DNA from: Salpingoeca rosetta
Lineage: Eukaryota > Protista > Choanoflagellata
Assembly: GCA_033442325.1 (NCBI GenBank)
Contig: JAWQFM010000018.1
Coordinates: 1,077,441-1,141,440, forward strand
DNA: 64,000 nt
Direction of reading: 5' to 3'
Part shown: positions 24,665 through 43,485 of the stretch, piece by piece
How positions within the stretch are numbered: the stretch's first letter is position 1
Layout: every line of letters begins with the position of its first letter
Program-made: the position numbers and the translations under genes
The notes under the pieces: generated by a model
The model's database searches: none
Told to the model about the DNA's origin: nothing
What the model saw: the letters and a program-made list of their open reading frames with translations, nothing else

Positions 24665-27739
<3,075 letters not shown>

Positions 27740-33473: not shown

Positions 33474-36400
33474 CTACGGGTTGACAATGGTGAGCGAGAC
33501 ATCGTCCACGTTGACCTGCAGGCGGCGGGCGGTGTTCTCAAACTCAACGGTGACAGAGTTGAAGGCGCTGTGTTCCGCAGTGACAAAGCCAACAACGGAG
33601 AGCTCCACAAACTCGCCGCGAATGACGTCCGTCTCCAGGACGCGGCGCGAGCTGATGAGCATGCGAGCATCACCCTCGCCAGCGTACACCTTCGCCTCCA
33701 TCTGCAAGAAGCGGTCCTGGTCCTGGCGCCAGCCAACGCGGAAGGTCATGGTCACCTCGGCAAGCGTGATCAGCTCAACGTCGCTGACCACCTGGCTGAT
33801 GGCACTGTTTGCGTTGACAAAGGCGACGTTGTTGCCCTCGGGCGCGCCGTCGGCGTACTCGGCCGCAGATGGGTGGAACACGCCGGAAACGCCAGAGACA
33901 ACCCAGTCCGTGATCACCGTCTCAAAGTCGCCCTCGTTCGCAAGAACCTGCGACTCAAAGCCCGTGTTGCCCAGAGGAACACTCACAAACTCCGTGGTCG
34001 TGGAGGTCGACGACGACGTGGAGGTCGAGGTGGAGGAAGACGTGGACGTGGACGACGAGGTGGATGTGCCCGTGGTCGTGTCCAGCGACACATCCACGCT
34101 GATGTTGTCAATGCCGACCTGCTGGCGGTCAGCAGTGTTGGTGATGACAAGGCGCAGGCGCTCGCCCCAGAGCTCAGGGCCAAAGTCAACCACGTCAACC
34201 GTCACAGCAGCAAAGTCGCCAGGGCCAAGGCCAGTGAAGAAGAACTCGGTTACCTTCGCGCTGGCAACCAGCTCCTGACTCTCCTCAGCGTACACGTCAA
34301 GGTCCGCCTGCAGGAAGCGGTCGTAGTCCGCGCGCCAGCCGACGTTCACCGCCACCTGCACGTGCACCTTGTCGCCAAGACGCACGCCCTGCAGCAGCTG
34401 CCACGCGCTCGCCCCCGCGTTGAGGTACAACACCTGGTCCTGGTCCGGCACGTTGTACTCGCCGTTGTTGGGGAAGAAGGTGCCAGCCTGGCCAGAGAGC
34501 GCCCAGTTGTCCGCAGCCGCAATGAAGCCGCCAGCGCTCAGCTCGTTGTCCTCAAAGGATGGGTTGAACACGGATGGAGGAACAAAGGGTGTTGTCGTGG
34601 TCGTCGTGGAAGAGGACGACGATGTTGACGTCGAAGTCGATGTGGACGTGGAAGTCGACGATGTCGTGCTTGTGGAGGTCGAGGTGCTGGTCGAGGTGGA
34701 GGACGATGTGCTGGTGGACGTGGAGGTTGAAGTTGAGGTTGAGGTGCTCGTGGACGTGCTCGTGCTGGTTGAGGTTGAGGTTGAGGTGGAGGTAGACGTG
34801 CTTGTGGACGTCGACGTAGAGGTGGAGGATGAGGTAGACGTGCTGGTGCTGGTAGAGGACGACGTCGAGGACGATGTGCTCGAGGTCGTCGACGTGGAGG
34901 TGGAGGTGGAGGTCGATGTCGACGTGGATGTGGAGGTGGAGGACGTGGTTGATGTAGAGGTGGAGGTTGACGTGGAGGTGGAGGTGGATGTCACCGTGGT
35001 CACGTACTCACGCTTGCACATGTACGAGCGGCGGCGCGTGCAGGGAAGCTCCTCCCACTCGCCGTTCTGGGTGTTCTGCACAAGGCACGCGCCTGGCGTC
35101 GTCGCAGACGCAGCAAGCGGCCACCCAAAGTCAACCGCCTCGCTGCCGTCAACCCACTCAATACTCGCGCCATCGTCGGTCAGGTGGGCACCCAGCCACA
35201 CCTGGTTGTTGGTCGTCGAAGCACGAATCACAACAAGCACAAAGTCAAGCTCCGCCTGCGACAGCACGCTCACCAGCGAGCCATCCCACTCGTCAACGCA
35301 GTAGGCCCACGCCTCGTCAAACGTCACCTTCTCATCAACATACTGGTACAGCGACCCATCAAACACGGCAACGCCAGGCTCAACAGTGCGGAACAGCGTG
35401 CTGGTGCTTGTCGACGTCGACGTCGACGAAGACGTGGAGGAGGAGGTGGATGTCGTGGTGGATGTCGACGAGGAAGTCGACGACGACGACGAGGTGGATG
35501 ACGACGACGAGGTGGTCGTGGACGTGGACGACGATGTGGAGGAAGACGTGGAGGTGGATGACGATGAGGACGTCGAGGTCGAGGTCGAGGACGACGTGGA
35601 CGACGAGGTTGATGTCGTGCTGCTGCTGCTCGTGGAGGTGGACGACGAGGTGGAGGTAGAGGTCGAGGTCGAGGTGGACGACGATGTGGTGAAGGCGTTG
35701 CGCTTGCAGATGAAGCCACGCAGGGACTGGCAGCCAAGGTCGGCCCATGTGCCGTCACGCTCGTCCGTGGTGCCCGTGTTGAAGACAACGCAGAACTGGT
35801 CGCCATCAAAGTTGTTGGGCTCACCCTCCTCCCATGGCAGCGGCCACAGGCGCGTCGTACGGCCGTCCTGCCACCAGATGCTGTCGTGGGCCTCGTTGAA
35901 CTCGGCGCCAATCCACAGCTGGCGCAGGTCTGTCGTCTTGGGCACAATCTGGCGCAGGAACGTCTGCTCCTCGGCGTCCAGGATGGTGGCGAGGTAGCCG
36001 TCCTCAGCTTCGCAGCTGGCCTGCGCATCATCCTGCGACTGCTTGTCCTGGATCACGCGGAACTCAAAGTTGCCAAACTCGGTCCACTCTGGTGTCGTTG
36101 TCGAGAACGATGATGGGAGGGTCCAGAGAAGAGGGAGCAGAGGAGAGGGTGTGTGTGTGTGTGTGTGTGTGTGTTTCGGGTGAGCAAGGGGGTGCATCGG
36201 AAACGTCAGAGAAACAGGCGGTGCGCGCATACAGACGACAATAAAGCAACACGAGCGTACAGACAACAAGTGAACGCGTGCATACGAGACAAAGTGAAAC
36301 ATCACAGCTCCAAGAGCAGTTGCATGCATGCATGCATGCATGCATGCATGGTGCCATTCTCGCAGATGAGTGAGTCACACGCACCAACGAGGTTATCGAC

Positions 36401-38447
36401 GAGGAACTCAGAGGTTGAAGAAGACGAGGTGGAGGTTGAAGTCGATGTGGAAGTCGATGTGGAGGTTGTGGAGGAGGTTGAGGTCGATGTCGAGGTGCTG
36501 GTGGAAGTGGAGGTCGAGGTGCTGGTTGAAGTGGACGTGGATGTGGAGGTGGACGTAGACGTGGAAGTCGAAGTTGACGTCGAGGTCGATGTAGATGTGG
36601 AGGTGCTAGTGGAGGTGGAGGTTGAAGTGCTAGTGGAGGTTGAAGTGCTAGTGGAGGTTGAAGTGGATGTTGAAGTTGAAGTGGACGTGCTGGTGGAGGT
36701 GGAGGTGGATGTGACCGTGGTGATGTAAGGGGCCTTGCACACGTATGAGCGGCGGCGGGTGCAGGAGAGGTCCTCCCACTGGTCGTTGTCCTGGTTCTGC
36801 ACGACGCAAGCAAGCGGGGTTGTGCCGACGAGCGGGTCCGTGAAGTTTGTTGGGCTCATGTCGGTCCACTCCAGGGACAGGCCATCGTTGGAGAGCTGTG
36901 CGCCGAGCCAGATTTGGGTGTTGGTGGTGACGACGCTGAGGAAGTCGATGAAGAAGCGGTATTCGTCGTTGCTGAGGAGGCTGACAAGCTCGGCGTTGTC
37001 GTCGCGGCACGCGGCGAGGGCAGTATCAAACTGCACCTTGTCGTCGTAAAAGTAGTACGTGTTGCCTTCAAAGAGGGCGCCGTCTGTTGGGCAATGAGTG
37101 AGGCAAGGGAGAAGGATGAGCGGAGCAAGTCAGGAAAAGCAGGTGGTGAGTGGCGGAAACAAAACGTGACACGCATGGGGTGGTGAGCCGACGTGGCGAA
37201 CGAAGGAGGCATGTGCACAGGGGCAAGCACAACAAGCACCAGCAGAGGTGTTACTCACTCTCGCCAAGGGCGAAGAAGAGGGTGGTGGTGGTGGTGGATG
37301 TGGTGGAGGAGGAGGTGGAGGAGGATGTGGAGGTTGAGGTTGAGGTGGATGAGGACGTTGAGCTTGTGCTCGAGGTGGAAGATGAGGAGGAAGTGGAGGT
37401 GGAAGAGGAGGACGATGTTGAGGAAGAAGTGGACGTGGTGCTGCTGCTGCTGGTGCTGGAGGAGGAGCTGGTGGATGTGGAAGACGATGTTGAGGTGGAG
37501 GTGGAGCTGGTGAAGGCGTTACGCTTGCAGATGTAGCCGCGGGTGGAATCGCAGCCCATGTCGATCCAGGTGCCATCGCGGTCCTCGACGGTGCCAGTGC
37601 TGAAGACGACGCAGAACTGGTCATCGTTGAAGTTGTTGGGCTCACCGTCGGCCCATGGCAGAGGAGAGAGGGAAGTGGTGCGGCCGTCTTGCCAGGTGAT
37701 GTTCTGGTGCAGGTCGTCAAACTCGGCGCCGATCCACACCTGCCTGAGGTCGGTTGACTTTGGCACGACTTGGCGCAGGAAGGTCTGCTCCTCGGGATCC
37801 AGGATGGTGGCGAGGTAGCCGTCCTCCGTCTCGCAGCTGGCCTGGGCCTCGTCCTGCGTGCGCTTCTGCTGGATCAAGCGGAACTCAAAGTTGCCAAACT
37901 CGGTCCAGTCTGTGCGGCATGGAATGAGCCGGGACGTTCAAGGGGTTGGGCGTGCGAGTGAGTTGGTGGTTGAGCAAGTGAGTGAGTGAGTGTGTGTGTG
38001 TGTGTGTGTGTTGTGTCGTGAGTGAGTGTGAGAGTGAGTGAGTGAGTGTGTGTGTGTGTTGAGAGAGAGAGAGTGAGTGAGACAGCATGTTTGGCTGTGA
38101 GAGTGTGAGTCAGTCAGTGTGTCTGCGAGGCAAACCAGGAGCAAGAGAAGAAACGCACCGAGGATGTTGTCCACGCCAAACTCAGAGGTGGAGGTGGAGG
38201 AAGTGGAGGTTGAGGAAGACGTGGACGTGGACGACTCCGTGACGGGAACCGTTGGTGTGACCACGGCTGTAGTTGTCGTTGTCGTTGTTGTCGTTGTTGT
38301 GTTCATCGTCGCTGTGGTTGCGGGCACGGAAATGGCTGGCGTTGTCGTTGTCGTTGTGGTGGTGGTGGTTGCCGTGGTGCTTGTCGATGAGACGGAAGCA
38401 GCCAGGGCAGCGACCACCAGCACGGCAAGCATGCTGGCGAGTTTCAT
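33474..38447 (-). CDS. Secreted C-type lectin/mucin protein (~1417 aa): signal peptide, 4 CTLDs, Ser/Thr spacers, two C-terminal beta-sandwich repeats
   Basis: Exons 38447-38159, 37909-37259, 37083-36385 and 36088-33474 total 4254 nt, all introns phase 1 GT-AG. Signal peptide MKLASMLAVLVVAALAASVSS. CTLD motifs (A...C, LA/VS, WIG/WLG, W, C, C-x7-C), with EPNN in CTLD1 and CTLD3. No TM helix is seen at the C-terminus. Confidence 0.93.
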
Positions 38448-40747: not shown

Positions 40748-41599
40748 TTTTCCTTCCCCATCATTCTTCGACACAAGAGAGAGCACCCCGCCCTTGCGTG
40801 CCTTGCACCCACCCACCCAACCAAGCTGTCGCGGGTTTAGGTTTAGATCCGGGTGGGGCGCTGTGTGTGTGTGTGTGTGTGTGTGTGCGCAGCGGGAATT
40901 CGAAATTGCGTCGTTGCAGTATAATGTAGGTTCTTCGTGTGGTTGGCCGCTGTTGCTTGGCAATTAGAAGGGTGTCTATTGAACAATGCGAGAACCACAG
41001 CACGATGGCACAAGGTGAAAGGAGGGGGGGGGGGGTGCCGCAAGGACAAAGCAAGCAGGAAGAACAAGAAGGCAGGACAAAGCAAGAAGGCAGGCCAAGA
41101 ACAAGAAGGCAGACAACCAAGCAACCAAGCAACCAACCGAGCAAGCGAAAGCTCTCACGTTGTGCTGGGGCTGTTGCACCGACACGGAAACGCACAGACA
41201 AACCAAAAACATACACCCCCCCCCCATCTCCCCCCACCTCAAACGCGTGGACAACGACATACAACGACATACAGACAGACACGCCGGAACACAAAAAACA
41301 AAACACAAAAGCACACACACGCTCACAAGCTCACATGCAGACTAACAACATACAGGCTAACACGAGCAGCAGCGTGGCAAGGAACGTGTAATTCAACGCA
41401 GGGTGCAAGGATGAAGGAAGATCAGGGTCACAGCACATCAGGTGCGCAAGAGACAGACGAGGGTCAAAAAGAGCACCAAGGTGGTGGCGGTGGTGGTGGC
41501 AAGAGGGGGGAGGGTGGCCACAACCGCAGTGTGGCGCAGACACGCGTGCGCATGCGGTCCGGTGCCGCATGGTATGGCTAGCCACGCTGTGCTCCCACG

Positions 41600-41787
41600 T
41601 TAGATGGAGGAGCCAAAGAGAACAAGGCCGACGTAGAGAACGGCCAAGAGAACACCAACTTGCAACAGCTTCTTGCCATCCGAGCCCTGGCTGCCAGATC
41701 CACCGTCTTCGTCATCATCATCATCATCGCCGCCCGAGGACTGATGGTTGCCCTCGAAGAAGAGCTGAATCTCCTCAAGCGAGCGGC

Positions 41788-41869
<82 letters not shown>

Positions 41870-42860
41870 GGAACAGACAATATGTGAGAGTTGCCATAAA
41901 CCAGAACTGGGCGACAGAAGAACAGGGGCAAAAGAAGCAGGGCAGTCGACAAAGTGTGTGCCTTGGCACAAACTGCACGCACCTTTGTCTCTGGGAGCTT
42001 GAAGAAGACAAAAGTGACGCCGAGGACGCACACGGCGGCGTAGAGCCAGAAGACGCCCTGCTCGTGCAGGGCAGACTTGATGGAGGAGAAGGTCTCCGTC
42101 ACAATGAAGGAACACGTCCAGTTGAGCAGCGTGGCAAAGCTCGACGCAATGCCGCGCACGCGCCCAGGAAAGATCTCAGACATGATCAGCCTGAACCAGG
42201 GGTTGGGGGAGGCAGTGGTTGTTGCAGCAGAGGTTTGGGAAACGGAGGGGATGATATGTGAGCGTGAGAGAGAGAGAGAGTGTGTGTGTGTGTGTGTGTG
42301 TGTGTGGATGTGAGGCGGTGAAACGACACACAAGGAAGAGGCAAAAGGGGTCAGGTGGCACAGCCAAGCGGAGCCGACTTTGAAGCAAAGAAGCCGACTT
42401 GCAAACACACGAACAAACAAACAAGCAAGCAAGCAAACACGCACACATACCAAGGGATGGCGCCGAGGCCAATGGAGAAGCAGGCAATGTAGACAATGAC
42501 GTTGACGAGAGCAACAGTGCCGCTCACGCTGTACTGGTTGTTCTGCAACCAAAAGTAGTAGCCTGCCAGATCACAGCGTTTGATACGACGAGAGGACAGG
42601 CGGTGAACGCGTATTGTGATAAACAGGAGGCAGCCAGAAGTGCCAGCCAGGGTGAACGGCTGATAAAGGAGAGGGGGGGGGCGGGGGAAAGCGGCTACAC
42701 CAGTTCCGTTGCTGGCAACAGAACGACACACGGGACCATACACGCCCCAAGCGGCATCCTCGCAAACACTCAACATGCAACAACAGACCCAGATACACTC
42801 GCATAAACACGCACACACACACGCACACGCACACGCACACGCACACGCACACACACACAC

Positions 42861-42893
<33 letters not shown>

Positions 42894-43485
42894 GCATGGG
42901 GCTGACCAAGGAGGGCCGAGCTGGCAGCCATGCCGACACCGGCCACCATGAGGAGCGCACGGCGACCGCTCTTGTCGACAATCACGCAGGAGATGGCGGT
43001 GACAACAAACTGCACGCTGCCAACAATCAGCGCAGCCACGTTGGAATTGTCAAACCCGGCATCCTCAAAGATCTGAACACGCCAAGACCCGGGGGCAGAT
43101 GATTGAGTGAGTGTGTGTGTGCGTGTGTGCGTGTGTGTGTGCGTGTGTGAGTGTGTGTGTGTGCAAGCAAGTTTGGTGCCCAAACCCCCCTCAAACTCCA
43201 CACCACAAGACGGCGCAGCAGGACACGACGCAGCACAACAAAACATGATGGCAAACGCACGGAGCCGCTGAAGAAGATGACGGCGTTGATGCCGGAAAAC
43301 TGCTGGAAGAGCATGATGCCCGCTGCCACGACGAGGGCGCGACCAGAGGCGCCGCGGAACACATCCAGCACAGACGCGCTGCTCTCCTCCGTGCTCAGGC
43401 TCGCCCGCACCGTGTTCAGCTCCGATTCGCAGTCCGCCTTGGGCCCGCGCAAGCGCCGCAGGTCTCGCAGTGCTAACGGTGGCAG

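What the first reader, a model, noticed from the sequence alone, without database searches (positions are those of the whole stretch)
33474..38447. Rosetteless-like secreted lectin-mucin: candidate extracellular-matrix or multicellularity protein
Seen: signal peptide, multiple CTLDs with EPN, long (ST)n tracts, paired internal repeats and no membrane anchor. Established: S. rosetta Rosetteless is a secreted protein with CTLDs, Ser/Thr tracts and internal repeats that is required for rosette colony formation. As I recall, it has two CTLDs and many more exons, whereas this gene has four CTLDs and four exons, so it is probably a distinct gene. It is the only non-housekeeping gene in the window and has the longest upstream region (~3.1 kb against 0.2-1.4 kb elsewhere), suggesting regulated expression.
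Basis: partly seen in the sequence, partly recalled or inferred. Interest (0 to 1): 0.75.

Follow-up and report, generated by a model that had tools for sequence, protein, structure and literature searches.

The report
Secreted lectin-mucin with CBM-like repeats
This is a real four-exon choanoflagellate gene for a large secreted, sugar-coated protein carrying four C-type lectin domains and two bacterial-type carbohydrate-binding-like domains; it looks like Rosetteless only in its general layout and is not a close relative of it.

Summary
A minus-strand gene of four exons (38447..33474, three GT-AG phase-1 introns, 1417 codons) encodes an N-terminal signal-like segment, four Pfam Lectin_C domains, long Ser/Thr tracts (43% S+T) and no second hydrophobic segment. 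EPN occurs in two of the four CTLDs.

The Rosetteless reading is only partly supported. I placed the real rosetteless gene on another contig (C7) using a published primer. Its CTLDs are 26-30% identical to this gene's, and at least a dozen other CTLDs in the genome score better. Its RP1/RP2 appear to be short six-cysteine repeats. The two C-terminal repeats here are about 170-residue, cysteine-free HpiC1-like (PF22825) jelly rolls, and the rosetteless locus has none.

The AlphaFold model (pLDDT 95) matches Stig cyclases at Z 21.8, then carbohydrate-binding modules at Z 14-17. The cyclase catalytic Asp is absent, while a Ca2+-ligand Asp is invariant.

At least four genes in this genome combine CTLDs with HpiC1-like domains, three of them on this contig. 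A marine metagenome contig carries an orthologous 3' end (73% identity, dN/dS 0.17).

Most likely this is a multivalent glycan cross-linker of the matrix or cell coat, but its biological role is untested. Other first-stage notes of this scan had already flagged this stretch.

The parts
38388..38447 (-). Start codon and signal-peptide-like N-terminus (MKLASMLAVLVVAALAASVS)
   Evidence: First ATG of the open frame. It holds the only strongly hydrophobic 19-mer in the protein, Kyte-Doolittle mean 2.2. No signal-peptide predictor was run.
38159..38447 (-). Exon 1: signal peptide plus a Thr/Ser-rich tract ending ...SEFGVDNIL(G)
   Evidence: Sequence reading, with GT donor at 38158-38157 and phase 1. 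Translation.
37910..38158 (-). Intron 1 (GT..AG, phase 1), rich in CA/CACT microsatellite
   Evidence: period-4 array at 37977-38081.
37259..37909 (-). Exon 2 (651 nt): CTLD-A1 with EPN (37515-37907) and a 77-residue S/T tract (37281-37511)
   Evidence: Pfam Lectin_C E 1.2e-18. EPN shown in the alignment. Tract coordinates.
37084..37258 (-). Intron 2 (GTGAGT..CAG, phase 1), at about the same place as the predicted intron in the paralogue at C18:1031-1034.6 kb
   Evidence: The paralogue open frames break at the matching point, TFFKTHDG / MEKDYIV. The paralogue intron is inferred from the frame break, not confirmed.
36385..37083 (-). Exon 3 (699 nt): CTLD-B1 without EPN (36725-37081) and a 104-residue (ST)n tract (36410-36721), ending ...SEFLVDNLV(G)
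   Evidence: Pfam Lectin_C E 4.8e-13.
36089..36384 (-). Intron 3 (GT..AG, phase 1) with (TGCA)n and (CA)n arrays
35694..36086 (-). CTLD-A2 with EPN (start of exon 4), 76% identical to CTLD-A1
   Evidence: Pfam Lectin_C. Own-genome search gives 77% identity to the A1 copy. dN/dS between A1 and A2 is 0.24. The best PDB sequence matches are mannose-receptor-family CTLDs.
35397..35690 (-). 98-residue S/T tract
35004..35396 (-). CTLD-B2 without EPN, 51% identical to CTLD-B1; there is no intron before it, unlike copy 1
   Evidence: Second Lectin_C stretch in exon 4.
34590..35000 (-). 137-residue (ST)n tract
34080..34592 (-).
   Evidence: PF22825 is over its cut-off at G000:C18:1111538-1112017, 41.5 bits against a cut-off of 27. 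It is a member of alignment A1, all 13 members of which match PF22825.
33993..34079 (-). 29-residue S/T linker between the two jelly rolls
33477..34004 (-). HpiC1-like (PF22825) jelly-roll domain 2, running to the C-terminus
   Evidence: Pfam E 4.1e-16, 60 bits. AlphaFold2 pLDDT 95. Foldseek E 3.6e-12 and TM about 0.8 to Stig cyclases. VIA Z 21.8, rmsd 1.7 A over 164 residues. A metagenome contig is 73% identical and has the same stop.
33474..33476 (-). Stop codon TAG

Best explanation
The gene encodes a large protein (about 1417 residues) that is exported through an N-terminal signal peptide.

Six globular modules are strung on long Ser/Thr-rich linkers. By analogy with mucins, these linkers are probably heavily O-glycosylated and extended. 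The modules are:
- two CTLDs with the EPN motif;
- two CTLDs without it;
- two C-terminal HpiC1-like beta-jelly-roll domains of the carbohydrate-binding-module type.

The jelly rolls keep a structural Ca2+ ligand but lack the cyclase catalytic acid. They are therefore binding or scaffold modules, not enzymes.

The most likely working mode is a soluble, multivalent glycan-binding cross-linker in the cell coat, theca or extracellular matrix. It could also itself be a glycan ligand through its mucin tracts.

Shown here: the gene structure, the domain identities, the fold, the absence of an anchor, purifying selection, and membership of a small CTLD + HpiC1-like gene family distinct from Rosetteless.

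Inferred: secretion, O-glycosylation, glycan binding and the matrix or coat role.
For: Gene model and frame.

Domains: four Lectin_C domains, each with four Cys.

Topology: 43% S+T and only one hydrophobic segment, at the N-terminus.

C-terminal repeats: both are PF22825. The model has pLDDT 95. The fold match to Stig cyclases is Z 21.8, followed by porphyran-, alginate-, xylan- and galactan-binding CBMs at Z 14-17. ESM Atlas look-alikes are DUF642, CBM_4_9 and galactose-binding-like clusters.

Catalytic residue: HpiC1 D214 is the catalytic acid and D216 a Ca2+ ligand (bioRxiv 10.1101/173674). In the profile alignment to Stig cyclases, the D-F-D-N motif aligns so that the D216 position is the invariant Asp of all 13 copies in this genome. 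The D214 position is N, G, A or V in those copies.

Selection: dN/dS is 0.24 between the A copies and 0.29 between the B copies. It is 0.17 against an environmental orthologue of the last domain.

Secretion of relatives: other family members start with signal-like peptides, for example the stand-alone HpiC1-like gene at L027:6713-7273.
Against: No expression, localisation or binding data exist for this gene in anything I could search.

The canonical CTLD Ca2+ site 2 is incomplete. EPN is present, but WND is WID/WAD and the Glu before the Cys is Gln. Ca2+-dependent sugar binding by the A-type CTLDs is therefore not assured, and the B-type CTLDs lack the motif altogether.

A shared fold with CBMs does not prove carbohydrate binding.

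The signal peptide was judged by hydrophobicity only.

The splice junctions have no RNA support here.
Confidence: 0.6

Rival explanations
1. It is a functional relative of Rosetteless: a basal-ECM lectin needed for, or regulated with, rosette development.
For: It shares building blocks with Rtls: a signal peptide, CTLDs with EPN and S/T tracts. Rtls is an ECM lectin required for rosettes (PMC4381721; PMC7314544). Rosette ECM also depends on glycosyltransferases, so further lectins or mucins in that matrix are plausible.
Against: It lies at a different locus. The Rtls CTLDs are only 26-30% identical and rank behind a dozen other CTLDs in the genome. The Rtls locus has no HpiC1-like domain, and its own repeats are short Cys-rich units. 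No expression or phenotype data link this gene to rosettes.
Confidence: 0.12
2. It is a prey- or microbe-recognition lectin. It is secreted or sits on the collar surface and binds bacterial polysaccharides for capture, agglutination or sensing, rather than building the cell's own matrix.
For: CTLD-A is closest in sequence to mannose-receptor-family CTLDs. The C-terminal domains belong to a family that, in the database hits scanned, occurs largely in bacterial-type proteins with PEP-CTERM tails. Structurally they resemble polysaccharide-binding CBMs. Choanoflagellates feed on bacteria and respond to them (background stated in PMC4381721).
Against: No binding data. The canonical sugar/Ca2+ site in CTLD-A is incomplete. 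Nothing in the sequence distinguishes self-matrix ligands from bacterial ones.
Confidence: 0.22
3. The C-terminal repeats are enzymes of the Stig-cyclase type, and the protein is a secreted catalyst.
For: The best structural and Pfam matches are to the HpiC1/Stig cyclases.
Against: The catalytic Asp (HpiC1 D214) is replaced by N, G, A or V in all 13 copies in this genome. Sequence identity to the cyclases is about 20%. Among the ten database hits scanned, five carry PEP-CTERM tails and none is a known cyclase. No indole-isonitrile pathway context was seen.
Confidence: 0.02
4. The model is an artefact or a decaying pseudogene, with low-complexity ORFs that happen to stay open.
For: Much of the coding length is (ST)n repeat, which stays open by composition. 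There is no transcript evidence here. Three protein-database searches returned nothing.
Against: All six globular domains are intact and score above Pfam thresholds. The splice sites are canonical and keep frame. dN/dS is 0.17-0.29. An environmental orthologue keeps the same C-terminus and stop.
Confidence: 0.03

Closest known systems
Rosetteless (rtls; EGD82922 / XP_004995286 / PTSG_03555) of Salpingoeca rosetta
   Same: Both are secreted-type proteins from the same organism with CTLDs that carry EPN and four Cys, separated by long Ser/Thr tracts, plus a pair of C-terminal repeats (PMC4381721).
   Different: Rtls is at a different locus, C7 rather than C18. It has 12 exons and two CTLDs, against four exons and four CTLDs here. 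CTLD identity is only 26-30%. The Rtls repeats appear to be ~60-residue six-Cys units, whereas these are ~170-residue Cys-free PF22825 jelly rolls. The Rtls locus has no PF22825 domain.
Paralogous CTLD + HpiC1-like genes of the same genome (G000:C18:1031.0-1034.6 kb; C18:833.8-836.7 kb; C21:294.8-296.7 kb)
   Same: Same domain vocabulary and, in the two C18 genes, the same order: CTLDs, then S/T or T tracts, then HpiC1-like domains. The C18:1031-1034.6 kb gene is on the same strand and contig, and its open frame breaks before CTLD-B at the same place as intron 2 here.
   Different: Domain counts differ (2+3, at least 4+1, and a much larger protein on C21). Identities are only 30-40%. Only the window gene has the internally duplicated A/B CTLD module.
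Stig cyclases HpiC1 / FamC1 / FilC / FisC (PDB 5wpr, 5yvk, 5z53, 6a99), the founders of Pfam PF22825
   Same: Same fold: Z 21.4-21.8, rmsd 1.7-2.0 A over about 165 residues. Same Pfam family. The Asp equivalent to Ca2+ ligand D216 is conserved.
   Different: About 20% identity. The catalytic D214 is absent. Here the domain sits as tandem modules at the end of a eukaryotic mucin-like lectin, whereas the cyclases are stand-alone cyanobacterial enzymes.
Beta-sandwich carbohydrate-binding modules (CBM4, CBM16, CBM22, CBM61; porphyran- and alginate-binding CBMs) and DUF642 proteins
   Same: Second tier of fold matches, Z 14-17. These are the ESM Atlas look-alikes. The N-x-x-F-E start and the C-terminal Asp are of the kind that binds structural Ca2+ in such modules. 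The published HpiC1 work itself notes the CBM relationship.
   Different: No significant sequence match to these CBM families from the window domains themselves. No ligand is known.
Animal multi-CTLD receptors of the mannose-receptor family (MRC1, PLA2R, DEC-205)
   Same: They are the best PDB sequence matches for CTLD-A (E down to 1.7e-30 when summed over their repeats) and also carry several tandem CTLDs.
   Different: The animal receptors are type I membrane proteins with ricin-B and FnII domains and no mucin tracts or jelly rolls. This protein has no anchor.

Membership tests
Rosetteless (Rtls) orthologue or close family | Same locus or gene as EGD82922 (12 exons; supercontig 8, about 426-431 kb) | tested here: not met
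   Published primer Rtls_4L maps to G000:C7:751735-751755. The window is G000:C18:1077441-1141440. This gene has four exons.
Rosetteless (Rtls) orthologue or close family | C-terminal repeats homologous to Rtls RP1/RP2 | tested here: not met
   tblastn of both window repeats against the Rtls locus gave no hit at E<=10 other than a chance 5-residue word. A profile HMM of the repeats with filters off found nothing in six frames of L026. The only internal repeats I found in the 3' part of Rtls are six-Cys units of about 60 residues. I did not see the paper's own RP1/RP2 boundaries, so that identification is mine.
Rosetteless (Rtls) orthologue or close family | CTLDs closer to Rtls CTLDs than to other CTLDs of the genome | tested here: not met
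   The Rtls CTLDs rank 13th and 22nd (E 1.8e-9 and 1.7e-6). Twelve matches rank above the better one: two are the gene's own A copies, and the other ten score 1e-16 to 1e-20.
Rosetteless (Rtls) orthologue or close family | Signal peptide, EPN-bearing CTLDs and Ser/Thr-rich tracts | tested here: met
   These features are generic and do not define a family.
Rosetteless (Rtls) orthologue or close family | Required for rosette development; localises to the basal ECM of rosettes | not testable with these tools
   This needs a knockout and immunolocalisation.
C-type lectin-like domain (Pfam PF00059) | Profile score above the gathering cut-off, and four conserved Cys | tested here: met
   68.3, 50.2 and 95.2 (two stretches) bits against a cut-off of 22.6. 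There are 16 Cys for four domains.
Ca2+-dependent mannose-type C-type lectin (functional CRD) | Complete Ca2+ site 2: EPN, the Glu before the conserved Cys, and WND | tested here: inconclusive
   The A-type CTLDs have EPN but Gln-Phe-Cys instead of Glu-x-Cys, and WID/WAD instead of WND. The B-type CTLDs lack EPN. Rtls CTLD2 in the same alignment has EPN, E-A-C and WND. The rule itself comes from established CTLD knowledge (Drickamer 1992, as cited in PMC4381721).
HpiC1-like domain (Pfam PF22825) | Profile score above the cut-off, and the flattened beta-jelly-roll fold of HpiC1 | tested here: met
   RP2 scores 60 bits. In the genome search, 59.5 and 41.5 bits against a cut-off of 27. Z 21.8 and rmsd 1.7 A to 5yvk and others.
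Stig cyclase (enzyme) | Catalytic Asp (HpiC1 D214), stated to be 100% conserved in known Stig cyclases | tested here: not met
   The position aligned to the first Asp of D-F-D-N is N in RP2, G in RP1, and N, A, G or V in the 11 other copies in this genome. The residue mapping rests on an HMM alignment and on the D214/D216 spacing given in the paper.
Mucin-like protein | Long Ser/Thr-rich tracts that are O-glycosylated | tested here: inconclusive
   The tracts are present (29-137 residues). Glycosylation cannot be tested here.

The most novel reading that the evidence does not exclude
The gene belongs to a conserved choanoflagellate family that welds animal-type C-type lectin domains to a jelly-roll module that is otherwise mainly bacterial and PEP-CTERM-associated. 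That module may once have been acquired from bacteria and then expanded. Under this reading the family forms part of the glycan-based matrix or bacterial-sensing surface that underlies colony formation. That would make it a second, Rosetteless-independent class of lectin in choanoflagellate multicellularity or host-microbe signalling.
Probability: 0.12. Interest if true: 0.65.

Novelty: new variant of a known kind. Interest (0 to 1): 0.38.

Why it matters
Rosetteless is one of only three genes that mutant screens have shown to be necessary for choanoflagellate rosette formation, and the composition of the rosette matrix is largely unknown.

This work shows that the window gene is not a Rosetteless duplicate. 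It belongs to a separate small family with at least four genes in this genome and orthologues in marine metagenomes. The family combines C-type lectin domains with a carbohydrate-binding-module-like domain that no paper I could search links to choanoflagellates.

This gives concrete, testable candidates for matrix or cell-coat glycan cross-linkers, or for bacterial-glycan receptors. It also removes a tempting but wrong homology argument.

The value is moderate. The parts are known kinds, the function is inferred, and nothing ties the gene to multicellularity yet.

Tried and rejected
Searches that returned nothing:
- All three homologous-protein searches (repeat region, last domain alone, CTLD-A alone) returned no hits, not even the gene's own product. 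The first was swamped by S/T words. These blanks say nothing about relatives.
- The search for related loci on genome contigs with the domain alignment failed because no stretch was conserved enough.
- None of the 155 proteins fetched (the best 150 hits of the exhaustive profile search plus five cluster members) contains a CTLD like this gene's. The combined architecture was therefore not seen outside this genome, apart from the collinear Tara scaffold.
- Literature searches for expression or proteomic data on this gene, and for any link between choanoflagellates and HpiC1, found nothing.

Results I set aside:
- phmmer of the repeats against PDB gave only chance FMDV VP2 hits and non-significant Stig-cyclase hits. 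The profile search and the fold search were needed to settle the match.
- Pfam on the whole of exon 4 missed PF22825. Scanning the repeats alone found it.
- Primer Rtls_2R did not match the assembly.
- In the tree of HpiC1-like domains, 12 of 13 copies from this genome group with 15 unlabelled environmental sequences, apart from all 19 PEP-CTERM-bearing ones. Support is weak (75), there is no root and there are no taxon labels, so I draw no conclusion about horizontal transfer.

Rejected readings: identity with Rosetteless, a Stig-cyclase enzyme, and a pseudogene.

Exons were searched separately by reference.

Full report
**What is there**

The window is eukaryotic, intron-rich and full of CA/TG microsatellites. 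It lies at G000:C18:1077441-1141440 of a 55.4 Mb, 68-contig assembly. Published S. rosetta rosetteless primers match this assembly exactly, so it is Salpingoeca rosetta or something very near it.

Reading the minus strand from 38560 to 33400 gives a clean four-exon gene:
- exon 1: 38447..38159
- exon 2: 37909..37259
- exon 3: 37083..36385
- exon 4: 36088..33474, with TAG at 33476-33474

All three introns are GT..AG and phase 1. The coding length is 4254 nt, or 1417 codons plus the stop.

The junctions are corroborated by the gene's own internal duplication. The exon 1/2 junction '...SEFGVDNIL(G/D)WTEFGNFEF' is repeated at exon 3/4 as '...SEFLVDNLV(G/E)WTEFGNFEF'. The sequence across intron 2 (LFFALGE|NGALFEG...) matches the uninterrupted LFRTVEPGVAVFDG... 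in exon 4.

Every search used the exons or domains by reference.

- Lectin domains: Pfam finds Lectin_C once in exon 2 (E 1.2e-18), once in exon 3 (4.8e-13) and twice in exon 4 (4.8e-27). The protein has 16 Cys, four per CTLD.
- Topology: the only strongly hydrophobic segment is the N-terminus (MKLASMLAVLVVAALAAS..., Kyte-Doolittle mean 2.2). The C-terminus ends inside a folded domain, so there is no TM or GPI-type tail.
- Ser/Thr tracts: tracts of 77, 104, 98, 137 and 29 residues, plus a Thr-rich N-terminal stretch, make 43% of the protein.
- EPN: it is present in the two A-type CTLDs only. In them the Glu before the conserved Cys is Gln and WND is WID/WAD. Rtls CTLD2 in the same alignment has the full EPN...E-x-C...WND set. 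EPN alone therefore does not guarantee Ca2+-dependent sugar binding.
- Upstream spacing: the region of about 3.1 kb is real. The next gene upstream is a same-strand MFS sugar transporter whose last frame ends near 41600. That also undercuts 'the only non-housekeeping gene in the window'.

**The internal architecture**

The order is: signal peptide, T/ST tract, then [CTLD-A, ST, CTLD-B, ST] twice, then [jelly roll, ST, jelly roll].

- The two A copies are 76% identical in protein and 80% in DNA (the genome search gives 77%), with dN/dS 0.24.
- The two B copies are 51% identical, with dN/dS 0.29.
- The two C-terminal repeats are 33% identical.

Both halves are therefore under purifying selection.

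**Is it Rosetteless-like?**

Levin et al. 2014 (PMC4381721) describe Rtls (EGD82922, XP_004995286) as a 119 kDa protein from a 12-exon gene. It has a signal peptide, two EPN CTLDs, S/T tracts and two C-terminal repeats, RP1 and RP2.

Their primer Rtls_4L hits G000:C7:751735-751755, which is a different contig. I fetched that locus as L026.

- It has two Lectin_C domains and nothing else in Pfam.
- The window's CTLDs are 26-30% identical to them, at E about 1e-9 to 1e-10.
- In the whole-genome search with CTLD-A, the Rtls domains rank 13th and 22nd. They fall behind CTLDs at C18:834-836 kb, C29:829 kb, C18:1033-1034 kb, C21:295 kb and C4:684 kb, all at E 1e-16 to 1e-20.
- Neither window repeat finds anything in the Rtls locus by tblastn.
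- A profile of 13 such repeats, run with HMMER filters off over all six frames of L026, also finds nothing. The same search finds two domains in the window and four in the paralogous locus L027.
- The only internal repeats in the 3' part of Rtls are two units of about 60 residues with six Cys (...C.L...LTCYYRD..C..D..CV.DA...FCIP.P..CT...).

The resemblance to Rosetteless is therefore one of generic building blocks, not of family.

**What the C-terminal repeats are**

An own-genome search with the repeats found related copies at several loci. I aligned 13 of them as alignment A1. The invariant positions are F16, E17, W34, G38, G41, R93, D95, G130, Q163 and D167.

- Every member matches Pfam PF22825 'HpiC1-like'. 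RP2 scores E 4.1e-16 and 60 bits. The genome holds at least 21 copies above the cut-off, in about 13 loci.
- AlphaFold2 on A1 gave a model with mean pLDDT 95 and pTM 0.90.
- Foldseek matches the Stig cyclases (HpiC1, FamC1, FilC, FisC) at E about 4e-12 and TM about 0.8.
- VIA-align gives Z 21.8, rmsd 1.7 A over 164 residues. A clear second tier of carbohydrate-binding modules follows at Z 14-17: porphyran-binding, alginate-binding, CBM4-2, CBM16 and CBM61.
- ESM Atlas look-alikes are DUF642, CBM_4_9 and galactose-binding-like clusters.

The HpiC1 paper (bioRxiv 10.1101/173674) reports a flattened jelly roll closest to a xylanase CBM. It names D214 as the essential catalytic acid, conserved in all Stig cyclases, and D216 as a Ca2+ ligand.

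In the profile-to-PDB alignment the cyclase motif D-F-D-N lines up with Q-V-N-V-D-D in RP2. The D216 position is the invariant Asp of all 13 copies. The D214 position is N, G, A or V and never Asp. I therefore read these domains as Ca2+-stabilised binding or scaffold modules, not cyclases. The residue mapping is by HMM alignment and the D-x-D spacing. A structural superposition with residue read-out would firm it up.

**Relatives of the domain**

An exhaustive profile search of 1.84 billion representatives found 3710 proteins at E<=0.001 and 1222 at E<=1e-10.

- Of ten hits scanned, all carry PF22825 and five carry a PEP-CTERM tail.
- The few named top hits have bacterial-style names from IMG.
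- None of the 155 proteins fetched has a CTLD like this gene's.

**The gene family**

Six-frame HMM scans of the fetched loci show at least four genes in this genome that combine CTLDs with HpiC1-like domains:
- the window gene (4 + 2)
- C18:1031.0-1034.6 kb (2 + 3)
- C18:833.8-836.7 kb (at least 4 + 1)
- C21:294.8-296.7 kb, inside a very large open frame

Three of the four lie on contig C18 on the same strand. A stand-alone, signal-peptide-bearing HpiC1-like gene sits just upstream of the second one. The C18:1031 kb paralogue breaks frame between its S/T tract and CTLD-B at the place where the window gene has intron 2. That intron is therefore probably old, and was probably lost from the second copy in exon 4.

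**Conservation outside the genome**

In a quick tree of HpiC1-like domains, RP2 pairs with a metagenome protein (P0054) with full support and 76% identity.

- Its cluster-mate P0156 lies on a 1042-bp ENA metagenome contig (L033). It is 73% identical over all 170 residues.
- On that contig the domain follows an S/T tract and ends at the same ...SLTIVNP stop. dN is 0.20 and dS 1.16, a ratio of 0.17.
- A 6.8 kb Tara Oceans scaffold (L029) is collinear with the paralogous locus L027 at about 60-70% protein identity.

An uncultured marine relative thus keeps both genes, which argues for function.

**How it most likely works (inference)**

The protein is exported. The S/T tracts probably become O-glycosylated, extended spacers. 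Six globular modules are displayed along them.

Such a molecule is suited to bridging several glycans at once, and to being bound itself through its own glycans. I therefore favour a matrix, theca or cell-coat cross-linker (confidence 0.6 for the whole statement, higher for the molecular description alone).

A role in capturing or sensing bacterial polysaccharides is the main rival (0.22). A Rosetteless-type role in rosettes is possible but has no specific support (0.12). An enzyme reading (0.02) and an artefact reading (0.03) are unlikely.

**Novelty**

Both domain kinds are known, and the gene is surely present as an uncharacterised model in public annotation. The combination of CTLDs with HpiC1-like modules, and the existence of a small conserved family of such genes, appears in no paper I could search.

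Other first-stage notes of this scan had already flagged the same stretch. s1-435965 and s1-438674 noted the Stig-cyclase/CBM resemblance. s1-436150 noted the Rosetteless-like paralogue idea. s1-436613 noted the phase-1 exons. I tested the first two fully and the others in part.

Noticed in passing
window 36088-38159: All three introns are phase 1, and exons 2 (651 nt) and 3 (699 nt) are multiples of three. The junction sequence is duplicated (..VDNxxG | xWTEFGNFEF). Skipping exon 2, exon 3 or both would keep the frame and give a two-CTLD isoform. This looks like a by-product of a tandem duplication that included an intron. Whether it is used in splicing needs RNA data.
   Followed up: partly
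window 35390-35400 versus 37084-37258: The first CTLD-A/CTLD-B pair is split by intron 2. The second pair in exon 4 has no intron at the matching point. The paralogue at C18:1031-1034.6 kb also breaks frame there, which suggests intron loss in the second copy.
   Followed up: partly
window 35004-37907: Synonymous divergence differs between the duplicated halves: dS is 0.64 for the A copies and 1.54 for the B copies. This could mean gene conversion across the A-type CTLDs, or two duplication events of different age.
   Followed up: no
G000:C18:833.8-836.7 kb, C18:1031.0-1036.3 kb, and the window (C18:1110.9-1115.9 kb): Three CTLD + HpiC1-like genes and one stand-alone secreted HpiC1-like gene (L027:6713-7273, minus strand) lie on the same strand of one contig within about 280 kb, forming a loose gene cluster.
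   Followed up: partly
L033:1-606, L028 and L029: Marine metagenome contigs (ENA ERZ17082817, and Tara Oceans SAMEA2621852 and SAMEA2622875) carry orthologues of the window gene's 3' end (73-76% identity) and of the neighbouring paralogue locus (collinear, about 60-70%). They presumably come from an uncultured relative of S. rosetta.
   Followed up: partly
L026:1209-2162 (minus strand): The 3' open frame of rosetteless holds two units of about 60 residues with six cysteines (LTCYYRD..C..CV.DA..FCIP.P..CT), separated by a tract of roughly 70 residues, almost all threonine. They have no Pfam match. They are probably the published RP1 and RP2.
   Followed up: partly
window 41578-43452 (minus strand): The upstream neighbour is a multi-exon MFS sugar transporter (Pfam Sugar_tr in three open frames), with (CA)n/(TG)n arrays in its introns.
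   Followed up: partly
window 25746-27461 (plus strand): A DEAD-box helicase exon (DEAD + Helicase_C) with a Gly/Arg-rich tail, resembling DDX3 or Vasa.
   Followed up: no
window 36321-36350, 36149-36174 and 37977-38081: The introns of the lectin gene carry perfect (TGCA)7.5 and (GT)13 arrays and a 26-copy period-4 array.
   Followed up: no
tree: 12 of 13 HpiC1-like domains from this genome group with 15 unlabelled environmental sequences, apart from all 19 PEP-CTERM-bearing database hits. Support is weak (75) and the tree is unrooted. The one exception (C16:258 kb) falls among the other database sequences.
   Followed up: partly
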